Below are positions 5,008 to 63,199 of a stretch of 64,000 nucleotides of DNA, piece by piece. The DNA is taken from contig NC_042998.1 of NCBI RefSeq assembly GCF_006345805.1, positions 58,156,001 through 58,220,000 of the forward strand, in the 5' to 3' direction. This stretch comes from Octopus sinensis. Its lineage: Eukaryota. How positions within the stretch are numbered: the stretch's first letter is position 1; the number at the start of each line of letters is the position of its first letter. The notes beneath the pieces are model-generated. The model was given only the letters and a program-made list of their open reading frames with translations. It did no database searches and was not told the origin of the DNA. A program made the translations under genes and the position numbers.

Positions 5008-5254
5008 CACTTGCTGTGTCTCTTGTTACAAGCCCTGGCATGTATTGCTATGAACCCAAACTATCATCCAGTTCTCAGCGAAGCGGATATCGCAGATATG
5101 CTAATGCAGCTTCTTCTGCCTTCCGATGAATGGTACTATACCAACCACAGCACCAAGTATGCCAAATACGTGAAATACAACGCTGCGCGAATTTTAGTTT
5201 ACATGGGTCTGCTTCATAAGCTTGGTGGAAGAGTCGATCTATTCGACCGGAAAC
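5008..5254 (+). CDS. Internal coding exon 1 of a large RasGEF-REM-domain-containing gene (helical/ARM-like segment HLLCLLLQALACIAMNPNYH...SDEWYYTNHSTKYAKYVKYNAARILVYMG...DLFDRK)
   Basis: Pyrimidine tract plus AG at 5006-5007; GTGAGT donor at 5255; 247 nt open and non-repetitive (phase 0 to 1); joins the 22033 exon in frame (C+CA = Pro). Confidence 0.9.
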
Positions 5255-6536: not shown

Positions 6537-6810
6537 CAGCAGCAGCAGCTGCAGTAGTGGTAGAAGGAGGAGGAGGAGAAGGAGGAGAGGCAGCAGCAGC
6601 AGCAGAAGTAGCGAGAGCAGCAGCAGTCTTAGTAGTAGTAGTGGTGGTGTTGTAGTAGTTGTAGTAGTAGTAGTAGTAGGAGGAGAGGAGGAGGAGGACG
6701 AATACGACGACGACGAAGGGGAGGACAAGAAGCAGCAGCAAAGTAGTAGTAGTAGCAGCAGCGGCGGCGGCGGCGGCGGCGGTCGCGGTGGCAGCGGTGG
6801 TGGTGGTAGT
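6115..6810. repeat. Compound trinucleotide repeats (CTG, CTA, GTG, TAG, GCA, GGA, GCG)
   Basis: Directly visible; source of the poly-L/T/S/V ORFs. Confidence 0.9.
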
Positions 6811-6974
6811 GGTGGTAGTATGAAGTTTTTTTAATAGACAGTGACACCGGGTTCAGTCCCGCTGCGTGGCACCTTGGGCAACTGACTTCTACTACAGCCT
6901 CGGGCCGATCAAAGCCTTGTGAATGAATTTGGTAGACGGAAACTGAAAGAATCCCGTCGTATATATGTATGTAA

Positions 6975-7059
<85 letters not shown>

Positions 7060-7250
7060 GTGTTCGTCCCCCCACAACATCGCTTGACAACCGATGCTGG
7101 TGTGTTTACGTCACCGTAACTTAGCGGTTCGGCAAAAGAGACCGATAGAATACAAAGAATAAGTCCTGGGGTCGATTTGCTCGACTAAAGGCGGTGCTCC
7201 AGCATGGTCGCAGTCAAATGACTGAAACAAGTAGAAGAGTAAAAGAGTGG
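6810..7250 (+). mobile_element. tRNA-derived SINE (family A) with (TA)n(TG)n core
   Basis: Matches copies at 20641, 39060, 49440 and 56508; ends aaacaagtaraagagtaaaagag. Confidence 0.85.
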
Positions 7251-14515: not shown

Positions 14516-15076
14516 AGATACATATATAGGGTAGCGAATATTCGTTAGAAATATCACCACCAGTGGCCTAGCATGTATAAATAGTCAATAGACAACATAT
14601 TCTTATTTTAAAATGGTTTCAAATTTCTTTAGCAAATAAGATTATCTGCCAGGCGAATTCTCATCAGTAACCGGCCTTAATAACTAACTTATAATTCAGA
14701 GACAAACAGCAGTTTCAGTCGGCAGTAAATACATAATGCCGAGTTGATTCTTCAAGAATGTTAAGAACATATTCATAAGATACATATATAGGGTAGCGAA
14801 TATTCGTTATAAATATCACCACCAGTGGCCTAGCATGTATAGATAGTCAATAGACAACATATTCTTATTTTGAAATAGCGTACATTTAAACACAAGAGAA
14901 AACTACCCTTTAACAGGTAATTTTTACATGCTAGAAGAAGCAGCCAAAACGGCCAAAACCACGATTTAATAGCAATTTTCGAAGGAGATGAAAAATAAAA
15001 ACGCTTACCTTGTTATTATTATTATTTTTTTTTTGCGGTTATACCATGGTTTCAAATTTCTTTAGCATATAAGATT
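14516..15076 (+). repeat. ~128-bp direct duplication; second copy split by a ~170-bp insertion
   Basis: 14516-14643 repeats as 14778-14876 plus 15048-15076. Confidence 0.85.
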
Positions 15077-20330: not shown

Positions 20331-20640
20331 ATTATTATTGTGGCTTAGTGGTTTGGGTGTTGCATTTCCGATCCCTAGATCGTGATGTCAATTCCTAGAC
20401 TAGGTGGCGCGTTGTATTCTTGAGCAAAACACTTCATCTCACGTTGCACTGAAATCACTTCGACACCTGACGTGTGGTACACCGCGCACCTGTTCAGGCA
20501 ACGTCGATTTAATGAAGAGAGTGAGCTAATGTGGCACGAAGATTTAATCCCTATAAACAGGGCTGTGTGGTAAGTAGCTTGCTTCCCTCCCTCCACATTG
20601 TTCCGGCACCTTCTACCAAGATGTGAAAAGAAATATTTTA

Positions 20641-20805
20641 GGCGTAGGAGTAGCTGTGTGATAAGTAATTTGTTTGCGAACCACATGGTTCCGGGTTCAG
20701 TCCCACTGCGTGGTACCTTGGGCAAGCGTCTTCTACTATAGCTTCAGGCCGACTAAGGCCTTGTGAGTGGATTTGGTAGACAGAAACTGAAAGAAGTCCA
20801 TCGTA

Positions 20806-20897
<92 letters not shown>

Positions 20898-21100
20898 TCT
20901 GTGTCTGTGTCTGTGTGTGTGTGTTTGTTCCCCCAACATCGCTTGACAACCGATGCTAGTGTTTTTACGTCTCCGTAATTTAGCGGCTCCGCAAAAGACA
21001 CCGATAGAATAAGACCTGTGGTCGATTTGCTCGACTAAAAGCGGTGCTCCAGTATAGCCACAGTCACATGACTGAAACTAGTAAAAGAGTAAACGAGTAA
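20641..21100 (+). mobile_element. tRNA-derived SINE (family A), full length
   Basis: Head ggcgtaggagtagctgtgtg...ccgggttcagtcccactgcg, microsatellite core, conserved tail. Confidence 0.88.
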
Positions 21101-21180: not shown

Positions 21181-22032
21181 ATCGTCATCATCTTGAAGGC
21201 AGCCAGGTGACGGATTCGTTAATACCCCGGACAAAGTTTTCAGCGGCATTTGCTCTAGCATTACGTTCTGAGTTTAAATTCCACGGATATCGATTTTGCC
21301 CTTTATCCTTTGAGGCTGATAAGCAGCCCGTACGCATTGGGGTCGATGTAATTGACTAGTCCTAACCTCAAAATTTCAGTCATTGTGCCTATAGTAGAAA
21401 AGATCGTTATTATTGAGGTGATGAGCAGGTCAACTCGTTAGCATGTCAGAAAAATATTTTTGCGATATTGTTTCCGTTCATTACGTTCTGATTTCAAATT
21501 CTGCCGAGGTTGTCTTTGCCTTTCACGTCTACGGTGTCGATAAAATAAGTACGAGTCAAATACTGGTGGTGATATAATCAACTTATATCCCACCACCACC
21601 ACCACCACAGTAAAATTGCTGGCATTGTGCCAAAATCAGAAAGGATTATTCTTATTGTTGCTATCATATTGTTGTCCTGGTTATGACTATAAACTACATC
21701 CGATAGTGGCACCACGGGGCCCTGGTTTCAGGGTTTGAGGAGTATGGAACCAACTTCTAGCCACTATTGTTCCCAGATCTACTCTTGGCCCGGTGTGGTA
21801 GCACCTGTAAGGGTTCCAGCTATGGGTTACCCCGCCCCCCCTCCGATTGGGGGCGGAGGCATCAGAGGAATGTAGTCGCCGTATTCCCTGCGTGACGTAA
21901 GAGGCGACTGAAAGGGACTGGAGCAAGGGCACTGGGGACACTCCCTTCTTAATAAATCCAAATTCCTAATAGACAGCAAGAAAAAAATCGTTTATTGTTA
22001 CAATTAATAATTATGTTATATTTCTGTTTCAG

Positions 22033-22187
22033 CATTTCAAGAGACAGTGAGTAACGCTGTACTACAGGTTCACTCTCCCGAAGATAGTTTCATCGGATTA
22101 ATGGCAATGGGACGAATTGTTGTCATCAATAAAAGCAATCGCCTCGAAGCAGCGTCTCTTGAAGGACTTGTTGCAGAACTCATTGAG
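22033..22187 (+). CDS. Internal coding exon 2 (PFQETVSNAVLQVHSPEDSFIG...RLEAASLEGLVAELIE), start of the REM-like domain
   Basis: tttctgtttcAG acceptor; GTTAGT donor at 22188; 155 nt, phase 1 to 0. EAASLEGLVAEL resembles the first REM motif (AGTLEKLVERL-type). Confidence 0.88.
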
Positions 22188-27415: not shown

Positions 27416-28164
27416 CTCCAAGCCAATAAATCTATTAGCTCATTGTAATTAACTATACCGAATATGTTTATAGACTATATCTTGTACGCATTTTATCTCG
27501 TGGATATATTTACCAGTAAAAGTATTTGGATAGATTCTTCATATTATCAGTAAATGAGATCACCATGCATCTAAATACTATCTATATTGTATAAGTCCTG
27601 GCTAGGCTTATAGCCAAAATAGTTGGAGACATTTTGCCGACAGTTGCTAATGCTTTAGACTTGCTCTGATTATTATTTAACAAAAGTTCAAGAAGTACTT
27701 TAACGTTTAAGAGATTCCTATCTATAAACCGAAGAACCTACCATATAAAAGTTAGAAGAGTCAAATTTTCTATGTTCTATGTTCAAATCTCAACAAAGTT
27801 CGTAGAATGTATTTATTATTCTAACTGCCACCGATAGTGGGGGCCCTGGTTTGAAAGTCCCATTGTTTTGAACTTGTTAACCACTATGTTTCCCCAGGAC
27901 TTCTCTGAGCCGGAGTAGTAATACCTTCCATGGCCCTAGCAACAGATTAATTAGCATGTCACAGAAATGCCTCAGGATGAGAGTGGGGGGGGGGTCACTT
28001 ATAGAAATTCCAACATCCCAACAGACGCAAAGCAGAAGATGCCTTTTAGCTCTTTAGCCTCTCGCCTTAGAGAATTTAACACTATAAAAATCCTACATCC
28101 TGTTAACTATCAGGCATGTGCCACTTGTTGCACCGAACCAATTCAAGTTAGAAGGACGAGAAAA

Positions 28165-28378
28165 TGGGACTGGCTTAGTATAAACAATTCCAACTATAAT
28201 AATAAACCTCTGTTACCGAGTGTGGTAATTTACAGAGTGCTTGAAAACCGCTATGGGAATAAACCCCTAGAGAAAATTTGGCGTGAGAGACCCTAAAACA
28301 TACATGTACCGTAATACTTAACCAATATGTGGCATCTCCTGCGATTCTATGAATGCTTGAAGCGTACTGACTTGTCTT
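28165..28378 (+). repeat. Direct repeat copy 1 (214 bp) flanking the rRNA mosaic
   Basis: Differs from 28639-28850 at only about 4 sites (3 substitutions and a 2-nt indel). Confidence 0.95.
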
Positions 28379-28468
28379 CGGAGGGAACCAGCTACTAGAC
28401 GGCTCGATTGGTCTTTCGCCCCTACACCCGGTTCCGACGATCGATTTGCACATTAGAGGCGCTTCGGA
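28376..28468 (-). rRNA. 28S rRNA pseudo-fragment B (region next to the LR5 primer site); non-functional
   Basis: cttcgagggaaccagctactagacggctcgattggtctttcgcccctacaccc...cgatttgcac is the conserved antisense LSU sequence. Confidence 0.92.
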
Positions 28469-28540
28469 ACCCTTCTCCACTTCGGTCTTCGAAGGTCTCG
28501 TTTGAATATTTGCTACTACCACCGAAATCTGCACCCGCAG
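28466..28540 (-). rRNA. 28S rRNA pseudo-fragment C (LR7 primer region); non-functional
   Basis: ggaacccttctccacttc...tctcgtttgaatatttgctactaccaccgaaatctgcacc contains the LR7 site TACTACCACCAAGATCT with 2 mismatches. Confidence 0.92.
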
Positions 28541-28639
28541 CTCGCGACGACCGGCGCGGCCGACGAGATTCGGCGTTGGGCTTCTCCCGGTTCACTCGCT
28601 GTTACTTAGGGAATCCCGGTTGGTTTCTTTTCCTCCGCT
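28541..28639 (-). rRNA. 28S rRNA pseudo-fragment A (5' end, just after the LR0R site); non-functional
   Basis: gattcggcgttgggc...ttcactcgctgttacttagggaatcccggttggtttcttttcctccgct is antisense to the conserved AGCGGAGGAAAAGAAAC...AGTAACGGCGAGTGAA; left boundary approximate. Confidence 0.92.
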
Positions 28640-28850
28640 GGGCCTGGCTTAGTATAAACAATTCCAACTATAATAATAATCCTCTGTTACCGAGTGTGGT
28701 AATTTACAGTGCTTGAAAAACGCTATGGGAATAAACCCCTAGAGAAAATTTGGCGTGAGAGACCCTAAAACATACATGTACCGTAATACTTAACCAATAT
28801 GTGGCATCTCCTGCGATTCTATGAATGCTTGAAGCGTACTGACTTGTCTT
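28639..28850 (+). repeat. Direct repeat copy 2 (212 bp)
   Basis: See copy 1. Confidence 0.95.
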
Positions 28851-29161: not shown

Positions 29162-30772
29162 GAAGCTGTAAAAGAAGAGAATGAGTGTATGCAGCCTCCA
29201 GCAATTCATCTCTCCAGTTCAGTTCAAAGTTTGTGCGATGTTATTGAACCAGCCGTCGATTCATGTTCACCCTACAAAGTCTCTCCACTTATTTCTCCAG
29301 CAAGTTCAGTGTCTTTTCTTGCAGATAACAATACAAAAACATTCCGAGAATTTTTACTCAGTGCTCTCCCTATGCTTGTCCATCCAGTTATCATATTACG
29401 CCTTTTAGCTCATAAACTATTTGGAAATATGGTGAAACGAAAAACCCTTTCATCAGATTGTAAATTAAAACCACCAAAAGTTCTCCCAATGGAAATTTGC
29501 CCACCTAGAGACAACTTAAGAGAAAATATCGGAGAGACAAATGGAGATGGTAACAAAGAATCTCTGCCCAAAAGGCGGAAAATTAACCTTCATGTACAAA
29601 TAACAAATTCACAAGAAGAGAACAACATCGCCAATAACTCACTCAAGGTATGTGAAAGGGACTTAGCACGACCAAATACATTGCAAATAAAAAACGGTAC
29701 AACCAAGTCTGCCTTGAGAGTGATTAGCGAGAGTTTGGTCACTCCTTTGGATCTGAATATAACTGCCTCTCCATGTAGTTTAGATAGCAATCATGGCACT
29801 CCAGATGGTGACGCGTCAAAAACCTCCAGAAAGCTATTTCGTTGGCCAAGTAAAAAACGTCTTTCAAAATCCAATGTTAATGTTTCAGTGACACACAGAG
29901 ATAGTGTGTGTAGTCAGTTAAGTCAAGTTAGTTCTAAGCCATCTTCGATTTCTTCCACACCAGATATAGATATAGCTGCATTCCAACGAGAGCTTATCAA
30001 CTTACCTACATTTGTAATGGATACTGCAATGTCAGACATTTCCCCAGTGTTTTCTCGATCCAGTTCTGTCCCCGAAAATCTATCATGCCGTGTAGTTAGC
30101 AGCTCATCAGTAGAAGACACTCTTTATTCAATCACTACTGATAATTTTGCTTCGGATAATGCTTTATGTAACAAAGCCATTTTACCCAGTGGCCAAGTGC
30201 TTGATTCACTTTGTAAATCTACTTCAGCTGTGACCATAACTGCAACAAATATGGGCTCCGGCATGATAACAAATACAGATGAAGACTTTGCAGACACGTC
30301 CCTTACGAATATTGTGGTTCGATTCGAGCCTCCATCGTCACCCTTGGGTTCAAGTTCAAGCCAAAGTCCGCATACATTTTGTGACTTATTTACTCCTAGA
30401 AATTCTGTTACAAATAGGGATGATAAAATAAATTTGTCAAGCCAAATGTCTACGGATAATAATTCAGCGGTGATTGAGAAATTCATTGGTCAGTCAAGTA
30501 ACAGTCCAGAATCAGATATCATTCCATCTTTCATGAATATCAACGGCAATATACAGATGTCTACACCAATGAGAAATTTATTAAATGAGATTCCTTATGA
30601 TCATCGAGGTGTTCTCAAAGTCATGAATACGTGGGTTAGCGTGTGTAAGACTGATCTTGAGAGTGGTTCCCTTGTGATCCACGAAATGCGCGATTTCCTT
30701 AATAAGCTGTCAGTGTTAGGACATGATTACAAAGCATGGTGCCATCAGATAAGCAATTTACTACAACTCGAG
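29162..30772 (+). CDS. Internal coding exon 3 (537 codons): REM-like motifs flanking a long Ser/Thr/Pro-rich insert
   Basis: ctcgtttctAG acceptor; GTAAGA donor at 30773; 1611 nt open, phase 0 to 0. TFREFLLSALPMLVHPVIILRLL and RGVLKVMNTWVSVCKTDL match RasGEF_N patterns (FLLTYR..F.TP..LL..L; RVL.VL..WV..H..DF). A PLC-epsilon-like or other CDC25-family GEF is possible, but the family is not confirmed. Confidence 0.92.
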
Positions 30773-31926
30773 GTAAGATGTTTCTTCAATTTTTAAATGT
30801 TTGTTTTAGTTTGTCTTTTTTAAAAGTCTACCATGTTTTCGAAACACTCGTTCCTTTATATGCTTTTGTTTACATTTCTAACAGTTCAGCCCACTTTACT
30901 ATATTTGATAGGAAGGAAAAAACATGTCATGTCCTTTTGGGTCATTGGACAACACTGAAGGATTTGCTTTACTACGAAGCCAGATGTGGCTCTGATCTTT
31001 CTGAAGGAGATTTGGCTGCGTAACAAAACAAATTGGGGATGGCCATAGCTGGAACATTTTGATCATTGGTTAACCTGCTCAGATCTAAAATAAGGCAATG
31101 CAAAAACAGTGATATTGCAGTGTTTTTGGGAGTTGGTGTCGATCTAGTAACGTACTTCGTTCTCCGTGTATGTGAATTCATTCGCATGAACATATTTTAA
31201 TGATAGTTAAGATGATTAGAAAATATTAGCATCATACTTTTATCTAATTGCATTAATAACTTTATTAAAATGAAAGCAATTTAACTGAGAAGTGAAACCT
31301 TCGATGTATAGCTCTGGCTTGGTAAAATGCTTACAGTTGTTTATTTGTCATGTACTTAGTCTACGTGAATCTATTTAACACTGCAATATCAATAAGTTCA
31401 ACCTATTATCAGATGTTTAATCAGAAACTACAAACAGGAACAAACTTAAGTGAAACTGAATAATATGGCATGAATCTTTTGCATTTAATGTCAGCGGCGT
31501 AAATCTCATCAGGTGATCAGGAAAAATTGATAACATGGTGCAGCACACGTTCTTAGAGACATTGTTAGCTCCAGACAACGGGAAAATGCTCACTCACACG
31601 AAGATTATGTTCAATGAACAATTTAATCTTTCATATTTTAGACATTTCCAAATGAGACTGGAATAGAATAAAATTGTGAGACATTTCTACTTTAAAATTC
31701 TCTGTTTCCGACTCATGAGTCTAGACGGTGCCTGAAGCGTTGTTTTGCTTACATCAACTAGTCTCGGCAGAGAGGAAAGTGTAAAGGAATTTTATCAGCG
31801 TTAAATGGAAATACTGATGAATCATACAGTCGTATAAATTTTTTTTTTAAATAACGTTTACATGAACTTTAGCAACGTGGATGAAAACCAAACCGTTGTT
31901 GGGAACGTGATAGGACAACGACCAGG

Positions 31927-39540: not shown

Positions 39541-39924
39541 TATATGTATCTAAGTATTCCGAAGTGCATAATGTTTCCCGCCGTAGAATTTATCTTTGAA
39601 ATGTAACACAAGTTACAGTCATGAAGAGACCTATTTCAGGCTCCTTATTTTTCCGCTTTACCTTATCGTTTCGATGAGAAAATAACTGCATGAATAAATG
39701 AAAAAATTTTCATTAACTCTCAAATTGGTAACCCATCGATGTTAATTTTGCAACAGTATAATATATATTTATATTAACACAGCGTGTTTATTTAAGAATT
39801 CCTCTTATTAATTAGTGTGTCTCACGAATTCTATAGGGCTGACCATTCATACATGTAAGTATCTTCGTAAGTCCAATCAAATTTTAGTAAGTCCAATCAA
39901 ATAACGGCATTTACAATATTTAAG

Positions 39925-40477
39925 GAAGCGAGCTGGCAGAAACGTTACCACACCGGGTGAAATGCTTAGCGGTATTTCGTCTGTCGTTACGTTCTGAGTT
40001 CAAATTCCGCCGAGGTCGACTTTGCCTTTCATCCTTTCGGGGTCGATAAATTAAGTACCAGTTATGCACTGGGCTCGATATAATCGACTTAATCCGTTTG
40101 TCTGTCCTTGTTTGTACCCTCTGTGTGTAGCCCCTTGTGGGTAGTAAAGAAATAGATATTTCGTCTGACGTTACGTTCTGAGTTCAAATTCTGCCGAGGT
40201 CGACTTTGCCTTTCATCCTTTCGGGGTCGATTGAATAAGTGCCAGTTACGCACTGGGGTCCATATAATCGACTTAATCCGTTTGTCTGTCCTTGTTTGTA
40301 CCCTCTGTGTGTAGCCCCTTGTGGGTAGTAAAGAAACAGGCATTTACCATATTTAAAGTGTAATAAATATAAATGCACACAAATTATCAGCGTGCATGCG
40401 TGTGTATATTTCTGTGTGTGTGTGTGCGCGCGCGTGTGCGTGTGTATGTGCGCGTGTGCGTGTGTGTGTGCGCGCGT

Positions 40478-46131: not shown

Positions 46132-46194
46132 TATATATATATCCGTACATGTGTGTGTACCTCTATATATATGTCTCTGTGTGTGTACGAATGT

Positions 46195-46475
46195 ATGTAT
46201 TTACTACCTCAGTAAAGCTGGACTCAAGAGTCATCTTCGTAGTCATAAACCTGGCCACTGGTGGTGGTGTAATACACCATACTAATAATATCTGTCAGGC
46301 ATGTAGAAGAGAGTTTAATTTGGCAGGAGGACTTAAACGACATGCAAAGGTGCATGAAGCCCAGTTACAACTACAGCCGGCTATTACCAGTAAATGTTTT
46401 AATTGCCAATTTTGTACAAGACATTGTAGATCTTTAGCTGAACTAAAAAGTCACATTCGATCACAGCACCAGTAA
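46195..46475 (+). mobile_element. LINE (RTE-like) C-terminal C2H2 zinc-finger remnant
   Basis: SKAGLKSHLRSH, CQAC..F....GLKRHAKVH and CQFC...CRSLAELKSHIRSQH lie in two frames with no usable splice acceptor. Confidence 0.55.
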
Positions 46476-49439: not shown

Positions 49440-49625
49440 CGTAGGAGTGGCTGTGTGGTAAGTAGCTTGCTTACGAACTACATGGTTCCAGGTTCAGTCC
49501 CACTGCGTGACACCTTGTGCAAGTGTCTTCTACTATAGCCTCGGACCGACCAAAGCCTTGTGAGTGAATTTGGTAGAGGGAAACTGAAAAAAGCCCGTCG
49601 CATATATGTATATGTATATATATAT

Positions 49626-49716
<91 letters not shown>

Positions 49717-49945
49717 TGTATATGTTTGTGTGTCTGTGTTTGTTCCCCCAACATCGCTTGACAACCGATGCCGGTGTGTTTACATCCCCGCAACCAAGCG
49801 GTTCGGCAAAAGAGAACGATAGAGTCAGTACTAGGCTTACAAAGAATAAATCCTGAGGTTGATGTTCACGACTAAAGGCGGTGCTCCCGCATGGCCACAA
49901 TCAAATGCTTGAAACAAGTAGAAGAGAGTAAAAGAGAGTAATATT
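49440..49945 (+). mobile_element. tRNA-derived SINE (family A)
   Basis: Matches the other family A copies. Confidence 0.85.
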
Positions 49946-50589: not shown

Positions 50590-51378
50590 TTTTCTACTCT
50601 AGGCACAAAGCTCGAAATTTTGGGGGAGGTATTCGGTCAATTAGATCGACCCCTGTACGCAACTGGTACTTAATTAATCGACCCTGGAAAGATGAAAGTC
50701 GACCTCGGCGGGATTTGAACTCAGAGCATGTGGACAGAAGAAAGACCTATTTCTTTATTGCCCACAAGGGGCTAAACATAGAGGGGACAAACAAGGACAG
50801 AAAAGGGATTAAGTCGATTGCATCGACCCTAGTGCGTAACTGGTACTTAATTTATCGACCCCGAAAGGATGGAAGGCAAAGTCCACCTCGGCAGAATTTG
50901 AACTCAGAACATGACTACAGACGAAATACCTATTTCTTTACTGACCACAAGGGGCTAAACACAGAGAGGACAAACAATGACAGACAAACGGATTAAGTCG
51001 ATTACATCGACCCCAGTGCGTAACTGGTACTTATTTAATCAACCCCGAAAGGATGAAAGGCAAAGTCGACCTCGGCGGAATTTGAACTCAGATCATAGCG
51101 GCAGACGAAATACCGCTAAGCATTTCGCCCGGCATACTAACGTTTCTTATTTCTTTACTGCCCACAAAGGGGCTAAGCATAGACAGGATAAACAAGAACA
51201 GACAAAGAGATTAAGTCGATCACATCGACCCCAGTGCGTAACTGGTACTTAATTTATCGACCTCGAAAGGATGAAAGGCAAAGTCGACCTCGGCGGAATT
51301 TGACCTCGGAACGTAAAAGCAGACGAAATACCGCTAAACATTTCGCCCGGCGTGCTAACGTTTCTACCAGCTCGCCCC
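50590..51378 (-). mobile_element. Head-to-tail array of four SINE family C units
   Basis: Units at about 50590-50745, 50746-50930, 50931-51146 and 51147-51378. Confidence 0.88.
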
Positions 51379-52739: not shown

Positions 52740-53425
52740 CAATTGAATGAAGCTAATCAGACACTATGGATTTTCATCTACGATGTGCTGCAGAAACGTG
52801 AAGCAAACGATCTCTTTTCGAAGAGAACCGTAGCAGCAGGCGATAAATGGATTGTCTATAATAATATGTATCACAAACGATCATTGGGGAAGCGAGGTGA
52901 ACTATCACAAACAATCTCCAAAGCAGCATTTCACCCGAAGAAAGTTATGCTTTAAATTTGGTGGGATTGGAATGGTATTGTCTGTCAGGACTACCTATCT
53001 GGATGAGTACTGCAACCAGCTGGACAAATTAGATGCAGCTATCCACCTGGATGTCAGATCGCATCCTTCTTTGCAAACACAGACGTTACTGGAGATGGGC
53101 TGGGCTGGGCTACGGTTGAGGGAAGTTTTGCCGCACCCTCAATATTCGACCGACATTGTGCCTTCGGATTTACACTGGTTTAAGTCTCTTCAAATCTCAT
53201 CGAATATACAGAACGTCCACGCTGAAGAAGATATATAAATTCACCTCGAAGAGATTTTCACTAGTAAAGACAGGGAATTCTTTGAGCAGGAACTAATGGT
53301 TCTGCAAAGTGGTAAATCTGCTGGAATGAAACTATAACTATATTATTGACCGAATACATTGCCTGGTGTTTAACGTTTGCGTCTTATTTTGAAAACTCAA
53401 ACAGACGTTTTGACCAACCCAAAGT
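52740..53425 (+). mobile_element. Mariner (DD34D) transposase pseudogene
   Basis: KRTVAAGDKWIVYNN...HPKKVML and VLPHPQYSTDIVPSDLHWFKSL resemble TGDEKW and HPPYSPDLAPSDY; TIR-like 3' end. Confidence 0.85.
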
Positions 53426-62631: not shown

Positions 62632-62703
62632 GAACGAACCATCACAAAGACTTCCAAAGACGATTCCGAAGATAAAGAGAATTGCCATTTGCAATACAAA
62701 AGA
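62632..62703 (+). CDS. Internal coding exon 4 (ERTITKTSKDDSEDKENCHLQYKR)
   Basis: Long T-rich tract plus AG at 62630-62631; perfect GTAAGT donor at 62704; 72 nt open, phase 0 to 0, compatible with exon 3. Not present in the ORF track. Confidence 0.75.
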
Positions 62704-63199
62704 GTAAGTATATTGAGAGCTCAGTATTTGACCTTAAGCTAGAGATTCTAATTAAATCCAGCGAAAATATATTGTAGCATTAACGCAACAACCATAATCT
62801 TTATCCGCATTATTTCATTTTGTTCTTCCTTACTAATTTTACCGCCCCTCTCCTCTTATTTATTATTATATTTTTTTGACCTTTTTGCTCTGATTATTTT
62901 CTAATTTATAAAAAACCTGGATTCAGAAACTATGTAATCTTATCAATCGCTGATGTCATGATATATAGGTTATATATTTACAAAGGCACGAACAAAATCG
63001 CCCATAAATAACTTTATACACATACGATCTCAGACGCATATAGCTCAGTTTCCAAAATACATCACACAGATGTTCTGGGATACATCATCAGTGATAGGTT
63101 TTGAAATCTTGGAAAGTTTGGATCTTTCGACACATCAGGTCTCTCACACAAATGTACAAACTTGTATTCCAGCAGCACAGGTCTTACCTTTTATTTATC

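What the first reader, a model, noticed from the sequence alone, without database searches (positions are those of the whole stretch)
28165..28850. Scrambled three-piece 28S rRNA mosaic inserted between a 214-bp host duplication
Seen: a 261-bp insert made of three LSU rRNA pieces sits between two ~98% identical direct repeats (28165-28378, 28639-28850), about 310 bp upstream of exon 3. In rRNA sense the order is 5' end, LR7 region, LR5 region, which is non-colinear. There is junction microhomology: host ...GTCTT overlaps rRNA CTTCG, and GGA(A)C is shared between fragments B and C. Known: normal retrotransposon TSDs are far shorter, and rRNA-derived SINE heads are usually one recurring unit. 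Inference: the + strand looks like a cDNA primed from a chromosomal 3' end at ~28378. It jumped between rRNA templates and rejoined 214 nt back, consistent with RNA-templated break repair or RT template jumping on the most abundant cellular RNA.
Basis: partly seen in the sequence, partly recalled or inferred. Interest (0 to 1): 0.82.

Follow-up and report, generated by a model that had tools for sequence, protein, structure and literature searches.

The report
Scrambled rRNA patch flanked by duplication
Three out-of-order pieces of large-subunit ribosomal RNA sit in an intron of a mollusc (probably octopus) phospholipase C-epsilon gene, between two copies of a 214-bp host segment; this looks like the scar of one old copy-and-switch repair or reverse-transcription event, which is a tidy example of a known kind of scar and not a new kind of element.

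Summary
DR1 (28165-28378) and DR2 (28639-28850) differ by 3 mismatches and one 2-nt indel. They flank 260 bp made entirely of three 28S rRNA pieces, all antisense to the + strand. In rRNA sense the order is Rfam LSU positions ~49-155, then ~1441-1512, then ~874-966, which is non-colinear. There is no filler, no poly(A) and no LINE tail. All four junctions carry microhomology of 1, 1-4, 4 and 3 nt.

Contigs from a related species (intron 84% identical) run colinearly through the right edge of the repeat. So the repeat is host DNA, not an LTR. The repeat copies differ by only 1.4%, so the event is much younger than the species split.

No second copy of the mosaic or its junctions was found in the window, in two very large protein-ORF searches, or in a metagenome scan.

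Best reading (confidence ~0.55): a single event in which a chromosomal 3' end primed on 28S rRNA, switched template twice, and rejoined 214 nt back. The enzyme is unresolved. A DNA template (rDNA), a two-step origin and mis-assembly are not excluded, because the species' own genome and reads were not available. Interest is moderate to low.

The parts
28165..28378 (.). DR1, the left copy of the duplicated 214-bp host intron segment. Its last 3 nt (CTT, 28376-28378) overlap rRNA piece C.
   Evidence: 98.6% identical to DR2 over aligned bases plus one 2-nt indel; homology ends sharply at both edges
28376..28468 (-). rRNA piece C: LSU rRNA model ~874-966 (the 'LR5' region, ending ...CUCCGAAG). Under the cDNA model this is the first template copied.
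   Evidence: 91/93 identical to rDNA contig L005 1844-1752; RF02543, 74.7 bits, model 872-970
28465..28538 (-). rRNA piece B: LSU rRNA model ~1441-1512 (the 'LR7' region). It shares TCCG (28465-28468) with piece C.
   Evidence: 72/74 identical to L005 1215-1142, about 540 nt downstream of C in real rDNA; RF02543, 60.3 bits, model 1431-1514
28535..28639 (-). rRNA piece A: 28S nt ~40-145 (conserved 5' core plus the start of D1). It overlaps B by 1-4 nt and overlaps DR2 by 1 nt (28639).
   Evidence: 102/105 identical to L006 937-833, a closely related 28S; RF02543, model 56-103; P0054 antisense-28S ORF contiguous across the former 'spacer'
28639..28850 (.). DR2, the right copy of the duplicated host segment (212 nt). 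It continues into the ancestral downstream intron sequence.
   Evidence: related-species contigs L001-L003 are colinear from inside the repeat, across its right edge, into the exon
29162..30778 (+). Large coding exon of the host gene (PLC-epsilon-like), 311 bp downstream of DR2. The previous exon is at 22032-22187, so the mosaic lies in a 6.97-kb intron.
   Evidence: 535/537 aa identical to P0050 residues 452-988

Best explanation
This is a one-off insertion made in a single event, with rRNA as the copied template.

Inferred sequence of steps:
1. A + strand 3' end at 28378 (...GTCTT-3') annealed through CTT/AAG to an internal site of mature 28S rRNA (...CUCCGAAG).
2. It was extended as cDNA over about 93 nt (piece C).
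3. The nascent 3' end (...CGGA) re-annealed to UCCG about 540 nt further 3' on 28S and copied about 74 nt (piece B).
4. It switched again, through 1-4 nt of microhomology, to the 5' region of 28S and copied about 105 nt (piece A).
5. It was then joined through 1 nt of microhomology to a - strand 3' end lying 214 nt upstream of the first break.

Filling in the two 214-nt single-stranded overhangs produced the flanking duplication. Those overhangs could come from nicks staggered by 214 nt. They could also come from one break whose other end had first been extended on the sister or homologue.

The polymerase is most likely a retroelement (LINE-type) reverse transcriptase acting in trans. A cellular polymerase with RT activity, such as Pol theta, is the alternative.

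Shown: the anatomy, orientation, piece order, junction microhomology, host origin of the repeat, and relative age. Inferred: that it was a single event, that the template was RNA, the direction of synthesis, and the enzyme.
For: - Three pieces, all mature 28S and all in one orientation, abut directly without filler.
- The order is non-colinear.
- Microhomology occurs at all four junctions, at least 9 nt in total, P ~0.007-0.03.
- There is no poly(A), no LINE tail, and no short TSD outside the repeats.
- The insert sits exactly at the joint between the two repeat copies.
- The repeat is host DNA. Its 3' part and right-hand flank are colinear in a related species.
- DR1/DR2 divergence is 1.4% against 16% intron divergence between the species. 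The pieces carry substitutions at universally conserved rRNA positions. So this is an old in-vivo event, not a fresh artefact.
- No ORF reproducing any mosaic junction was found among 5.8 billion clustered or 1.84 billion representative proteins, although ordinary antisense-28S ORFs are present there.
- No true junction match was found in the metagenome contigs.
- Template-jump chimeras and 28S/LINE-1 chimeras are documented (PMC2104539; 10.1101/2025.02.02.635956). Expressed RTE-class LINEs are reported in octopus (PMC9115989).
Against: - Nothing in the sequence proves an RNA template. rDNA would give the same product.
- A 214-bp duplication is far longer than usual LINE TSDs.
- Neither break site resembles a TTTT/AA-type endonuclease site.
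- Canonical trans-mobilised rRNA pseudogenes usually start at the 28S 3' end (10.1101/2025.02.02.635956), whereas these pieces are internal.
- Uniqueness in the genome, correctness of the assembly and an orthologous empty site could not be checked directly.
Confidence: 0.55

Rival explanations
1. Same architecture, but DNA-templated. A broken or stalled 3' end copied rDNA itself through serial microhomology-mediated template switches (MMBIR/FoSTeS-type) and returned 214 nt behind its point of departure. Alternatively, short rDNA fragments were captured at a break by end joining.
For: Microhomology at every junction and a flanking duplication are the classic signature of replication-based template switching. 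rDNA is a recurrent donor of insertions at induced breaks in yeast (PMC11372161).
Against: All three pieces come from mature 28S and none from ITS, ETS or IGS. All three share the orientation expected for cDNA of sense rRNA (1/4 by chance for independently captured fragments). rDNA is spatially remote in the nucleolus, whereas rRNA is the most abundant RNA. Plain fragment capture by NHEJ does not explain a 214-bp duplication. None of this is decisive.
Confidence: 0.2
2. Two separate events: first a simple 214-bp tandem duplication, and later an rRNA-derived insertion that happened to land at the joint.
For: The window holds another short-range duplication with unique sequence between and inside the copies (14516-15076). 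So local duplications do occur in this genome.
Against: The insert lies exactly at the repeat joint, with no loss or gain of repeat bases. The chance of hitting that position within the 426 bp of tandem repeat is about 1/400. One event explains everything.
Confidence: 0.07
3. A copy of a mobile or repeated element: either an rRNA-derived SINE-like family, or a miniature LTR element (TRIM) whose LTRs are the 214-bp repeats.
For: Terminal direct repeats of 100-250 bp around a 100-300-bp core match TRIM dimensions. The repeat starts with TG. 28S-derived SINEs exist (SINE28; mentioned in PMC5786205 and 10.1101/2025.02.02.635956).
Against: The repeat ends ...CTT, not CA. No tRNA-type primer binding site follows DR1 and no polypurine tract precedes DR2. 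There is no short TSD outside the repeats (GAAAA versus TCCTT). The 3' part of the repeat is ancestral host sequence, colinear with the flank in a related species. There is no second copy in the window and no matching ORF in the large protein sets. There is no poly(A) or LINE-derived tail.
Confidence: 0.06
4. An assembly or library artefact, for example a chimeric read carrying rDNA-derived pieces.
For: No independent assembly or reads could be examined.
Against: The two repeat copies differ at 4 sites. The rRNA pieces carry substitutions at universally conserved positions. Three short pieces joined by microhomology in one orientation, placed exactly at a duplication joint, is not the pattern of ligation chimeras.
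Confidence: 0.05

Closest known systems
Chimeric retro-pseudogenes made by LINE reverse-transcriptase template switching (bipartite U6/5S/28S-LINE-1 chimeras; the tripartite Magnaporthe chimera)
   Same: Several RNA-derived pieces are fused head-to-tail in one orientation at template-switch junctions within a single insertion. 28S rRNA is a documented partner (18 primate 28S/LINE-1 loci, pieces of 50-482 nt; 10.1101/2025.02.02.635956). Double template jumps are documented (PMC2104539).
   Different: Here there is no LINE or poly(A) 3' part and no endonuclease-type target. The flanking duplication is 214 bp instead of 7-20 bp. All three pieces come from the same RNA species, in scrambled order.
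Templated sequence insertions / RNA-templated double-strand-break repair (the class without poly(A) or TSD; Pol theta end joining with templated inserts). This comparison is from my own knowledge, not checked in the library.
   Same: Sequence from a distant donor is inserted with junction microhomology, without poly(A) and without an endonuclease motif. Serial template switches give patchwork inserts.
   Different: Those events usually carry small deletions or no duplication, and Pol theta inserts are usually under 30 nt and copied from nearby DNA. Here the insert is 260 nt, comes from rRNA, and is flanked by a 214-bp duplication.
Capture of rDNA, Ty cDNA and mtDNA fragments at induced breaks in yeast
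   Same: rDNA-derived sequence is a recurrent insert at chromosomal breaks, and some inserts have several donors (PMC11372161).
   Different: That system is experimental and somatic, in yeast, and mostly NHEJ capture of DNA fragments without long flanking duplications.
Tandem duplications with filler from staggered or paired nicks, and 'patchwork filler DNA' in plant end joining (from my own knowledge)
   Same: Filling in long overhangs yields a direct duplication, with filler DNA at the joint.
   Different: The filler there is usually copied from nearby DNA, not from rRNA.
SINE28 and other rRNA-headed SINEs
   Same: They contain LSU or 5S rRNA-derived sequence dispersed in the genome.
   Different: SINEs are multi-copy, built from one recurring unit with a LINE-derived tail, and have short TSDs. 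None of these features is seen here.

Membership tests
LINE-mediated chimeric retro-pseudogene | The 3' component is a LINE, SINE or polyadenylated RNA ending in poly(A) or a LINE tail | tested here: not met
   DR1 abuts internal 28S sequence directly. There is no A-run or non-rRNA sequence between the repeats.
LINE-mediated chimeric retro-pseudogene | Short TSD (about 7-20 bp) at an endonuclease-type target site | tested here: not met
   The duplication is 214 bp. The break sites are GTCTT|TCCTT (+ strand) and CCCA|TTTTC (- strand).
LINE-mediated chimeric retro-pseudogene | Components in the same orientation, fused directly at template-switch points | tested here: met
   All three pieces lie on the - strand and abut with 1-4 nt overlaps.
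rRNA-derived SINE / repeat family | Many dispersed copies of the same unit | tested here: inconclusive
   There is one copy in the 64-kb window. No ORF with these junctions appears in two large protein searches, and there are no true metagenome hits. The species' genome itself was not searchable.
rRNA-derived SINE / repeat family | LINE-derived or A-rich 3' tail and short TSD | tested here: not met
   neither is present.
TRIM / LTR retroelement | LTRs with TG...CA ends, a PBS after the 5' LTR, a PPT before the 3' LTR, and a 4-6 bp TSD outside | tested here: not met
   The repeat is TG...TT. The internal region is pure rRNA from the first to the last base. The outside flanks are GAAAA and TCCTT.
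TRIM / LTR retroelement | The repeat is part of the element and absent from the orthologous empty site | tested here: not met
   The 3' 75-150 nt of the repeat is present and colinear with the downstream flank in related-species contigs L001-L003.
Templated insertion at a break (RNA- or DNA-templated, microhomology-mediated) | The insert is copied from identifiable distant donor(s) | tested here: met
   96-98% identity to real 28S over all 264 nt.
Templated insertion at a break (RNA- or DNA-templated, microhomology-mediated) | Microhomology at junctions beyond chance | tested here: met
   3, 4, at least 1, and 1 nt. Total of at least 9 nt, P ~0.007-0.03.
Templated insertion at a break (RNA- or DNA-templated, microhomology-mediated) | The template was RNA rather than DNA | not testable with these tools
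   Only indirect evidence: mature-28S-only origin and uniform orientation.
R2/R1 rDNA-specific retrotransposon co-transcript | 28S sequence flanking the R2/R1 target site, joined to element sequence | tested here: not met
   There is no non-rRNA sequence in the insert. The pieces map to model ~49-155, 874-966 and 1441-1512.

The most novel reading that the evidence does not exclude
This is a natural, heritable footprint of retrotransposon-independent RNA-templated break repair in an animal germline. A cellular polymerase (Pol theta-like) copied ribosomal RNA through three serial microhomology-primed switches and then re-annealed out of register, producing a 214-bp duplication. If similar inserts with long flanking duplications recur across the genome (compare the unexplained structure at 14516-15076), it could mark a distinct cephalopod mutational process.
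Probability: 0.2. Interest if true: 0.6.

Novelty: new member of a known kind. Interest (0 to 1): 0.35.

Why it matters
Template-switch and templated-insertion scars are usually studied in cancers, cell lines or yeast reporters. This is a clean germline example in a mollusc, with every breakpoint resolved. The only donor is the most abundant cellular RNA, and the flanking duplication is unusually long. That makes it a useful natural substrate for two questions: whether RNA-templated repair leaves heritable marks in animal genomes, and how far apart the two strand breaks can be. On its own it is a single neutral intronic scar with no evident effect on the host gene. It would matter more if a genome-wide survey found more of them.

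Tried and rejected
- Whole-window Rfam scan at gathering threshold found nothing because the pieces are scrambled. Piece-wise scans were needed.
- The first Rfam alignment forced B and C into one hit with an internal 'deletion'. This was rejected after alignment to real rDNA.
- An apparent 22-nt unexplained spacer between A and B, relative to L005, was resolved as species-specific D1 sequence of piece A using P0054/L006.
- Exact look-ups of window ORFs spanning the junctions, of the upstream ORF, of the exon ORF and of P0050 were all 'not on record'. So no independent assembly of this species was reachable.
- A six-frame pseudo-protein query of 27430-28378, meant to pull out orthologous intron contigs, gave no hit.
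- The A/B junction scan of the metagenomes hit L007. This was rejected as a chance 22-mer in a 71% GC bacterial contig, with no extension and no rRNA similarity.
- The apparent cross-junction matches of P0061 and P0063 (query residues 5-46) were rejected. The real antisense-28S context is '...RLTHVQLLFTW|NPSPL', not the mosaic's 'RSICTLEALR|NPSPL'.
- A search for the SRA run identifier, to name the related species, found no paper.
- ADAR-type editing of the rRNA template was considered and rejected. The changes are G>A and C>T in rRNA sense, not A>G.
- The TRIM/LTR reading was rejected (see the membership test).

Full report
**Setting.** The window is AT-rich, microsatellite-laden animal DNA. 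It carries exons of a phospholipase C-epsilon-like gene on the + strand, at 5008-5253, 22032-22187, 29162-30778 and 62632-62706. The large exon is 535/537 aa identical to a 1170-aa UniParc protein, P0050. It is 98% identical to exon ORFs on Logan contigs of a related species. More distant hits, at about 40% identity, are gastropod and bivalve proteins, one of them named PLC-epsilon-1. I infer a mollusc, most likely an octopod. The species name is my inference and was not shown by any tool. The finding lies in the 6.97-kb intron, 311 bp upstream of the large exon.

DR1 (28165-28378) and DR2 (28639-28850) are the only two copies of this segment in the window. They differ by 3 mismatches and one 2-nt indel, and homology stops sharply at both edges. 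The 260 nt between them are entirely LSU rRNA on the - strand. The whole-window Rfam scan at gathering threshold reported nothing, because the pieces are scrambled.

Scanned alone, B and C pass the gathering score of 50:
- Piece B scores 60.3 bits at model 1431-1514.
- Piece C scores 74.7 bits at model 872-970.
- Piece A scores 41.4 bits at model 56-103, below the gathering score.

Two real rDNA contigs, reached through antisense-28S ORFs, fix the breakpoints. L005 is a Tara metagenome scaffold and L006 is a Logan contig with a very similar D1 region.
- A = 28535/28538-28639, 102/105 identical to L006.
- B = 28465-28538, 72/74 identical to L005.
- C = 28376-28468, 91/93 identical to L005.

A 22-nt stretch that looked unexplained against L005 is simply the species-specific D1 continuation of piece A. 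The insert therefore has three pieces and no filler.

**Junctions.** In rRNA sense:
- Host/A shares 1 nt.
- A/B shares at least G, and up to GCGG if this species' D1 reads C where L006 reads T.
- B/C shares TCCG.
- C/host shares AAG, which is CTT at 28376-28378.

At least 9 nt in total over four junctions has P of about 0.007-0.03 under random joining. There is no poly(A), no LINE-like tail, and no short target-site duplication outside the repeats. Neither break site looks like a TTTT/AA site.

**The repeat is host DNA and the event is old but not ancient.** Three identical-length Logan contigs from a related species (L001-L003) align colinearly from inside the repeat, across its right edge, through the intron and into the exon. 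They cover at least the last ~75 nt of the repeat. So the right boundary of DR2 is the ancestral context, and the repeat is not an LTR brought in by an element.

Because those contigs run through the right end of the repeat without a branch, that end is probably single-copy in the related species. This suggests an empty site there but does not prove it. The contigs stop inside the repeat and never reach the junction.

Intron identity between the two species is 84%, whereas DR1 and DR2 differ by 1.4%. So the duplication is much younger than the species split.

The rRNA pieces carry changes at universally conserved positions: GUAACGGCG>GUAACAGCG, UCUGACGUG>UCUAAUGUG and AGAUCUCGG>AGAUUUCGG. Together with the repeat differences, this argues for an in-vivo event that has since decayed, not a fresh library or assembly chimera.

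**One-off or family?** Nothing else in the window resembles rRNA or the repeat. A word-indexed search of 5.8 billion protein clusters, using the 102-aa ORF that crosses the C/B, B/A and A/DR2 junctions, returned only partial hits to ordinary antisense-28S ORFs. An exhaustive HMMER search of 1.84 billion representatives gave the same result. The few hits whose ranges seemed to cross a junction carry the normal rRNA context. Exact scans of JGI metagenome contigs found no B/C junction. They found one chance 22-mer for A/B, in a 71% GC bacterial contig. These negatives are weak, because the species' own genome was not in any searchable collection.

**Mechanism.** The simplest account is a single event.
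1. A + strand 3' end at 28378 anneals by CTT/AAG to an internal site of 28S rRNA.
2. It is extended over piece C.
3. It switches by CGGA/UCCG to a site about 540 nt further 3' and copies piece B.
4. It switches again to the 5' region and copies piece A.
5. It is joined to a - strand 3' end lying 214 nt upstream.
6. Filling in the two complementary 214-nt overhangs gives the duplication.

The overhangs could come from nicks staggered by 214 nt, which is target-primed reverse transcription with an unusually long stagger. They could also come from a single break whose other end had been extended on the sister or homologue before out-of-register end joining.

Three facts favour RNA over rDNA as the template, though none is decisive:
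- The origin is mature 28S only.
- All pieces share the orientation expected for cDNA of sense rRNA.
- rRNA is highly abundant.

A LINE-type reverse transcriptase is a plausible enzyme. Template jumping and 28S/LINE chimeras are documented (PMC2104539; 10.1101/2025.02.02.635956), and expressed RTE-class LINEs are reported in octopus (PMC9115989). Against a canonical LINE event are the missing LINE or poly(A) part, the missing endonuclease motif, and the internal position of the pieces. Trans-mobilised 28S pseudogenes usually start at the 28S 3' end (same preprint). A cellular polymerase acting in break repair is therefore a live alternative. So is a DNA-templated version, since rDNA-derived inserts at breaks are known in yeast (PMC11372161).

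**Verdict.** The insert is 260 nt, not 261. The B/C microhomology is TCCG/CGGA. The A/B join is direct. The locus is best filed as an unusually clean, rRNA-only, three-piece templated insertion with a long flanking duplication. That makes it a new example of known processes and not a new kind of element. Interest is moderate to low (0.35). It would rise if a genome-wide scan showed more such scars.

Noticed in passing
window 28165-28248 versus 28639-28720: All four differences between DR1 and DR2 fall in the first 84 nt of the repeat, which in DR2 is the part next to rRNA piece A. The differences are 3 transversions and an AG indel, and the remaining 130 nt are identical (P~0.02 for such clustering). 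By contrast, the changes in the rRNA pieces at conserved positions are all transitions. This could reflect error-prone fill-in synthesis near the joint, gene conversion of the distal part, or chance.
   Followed up: partly
window 14516-15076: A second short-range duplication with unique sequence at and inside the joint. The layout is a1 (14516-14614) + b1 (14613-14643), then a 134-nt unique stretch, then a2 (14778-14876, 97%), then a 169-nt unique stretch ending in a T-run, then b2 (15046-15076, 97%). There is no Rfam match and no other copy in the window. The origin of the two unique stretches is unknown.
   Followed up: partly
window 52743-53238 (+): ORFs with a mariner/Tc1-like transposase C-terminal motif (...PHPQYSTDIVPSDLHWF...). 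This is probably a decayed DNA transposon in the intron (judged by eye).
   Followed up: no
window 46149-46475 (+): An ORF with C2H2 zinc-finger-like repeats (C..C...H...H spacing) inside an intron. It could be a gene fragment or a transposon-borne domain (judged by eye).
   Followed up: no
window 39923-40340 and 50695-51365; also 6629-7090, 20638-20949, 49471-49764: Tandem ~184-nt units whose ORFs repeat 'RKDERQSRPRRNLNSE', and a dispersed element with a (CA/TA)n core present at least three times on the - strand. These are probably SINE- or satellite-like families.
   Followed up: no
L001-L003 (Logan SRR11869385/91/94), position 1: All three related-species contigs are exactly 2129 bp and start at the same base inside the repeat-equivalent region. 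That implies a consistent assembly-graph branch there, such as a repeat or indel boundary just upstream in that species.
   Followed up: no
L007 239-260: An exact 22-mer match of the A/B junction in a 71% GC bacterial metagenome contig, with no extension. It is a reminder that GC-rich 22-mers can match by chance at this database size.
   Followed up: yes
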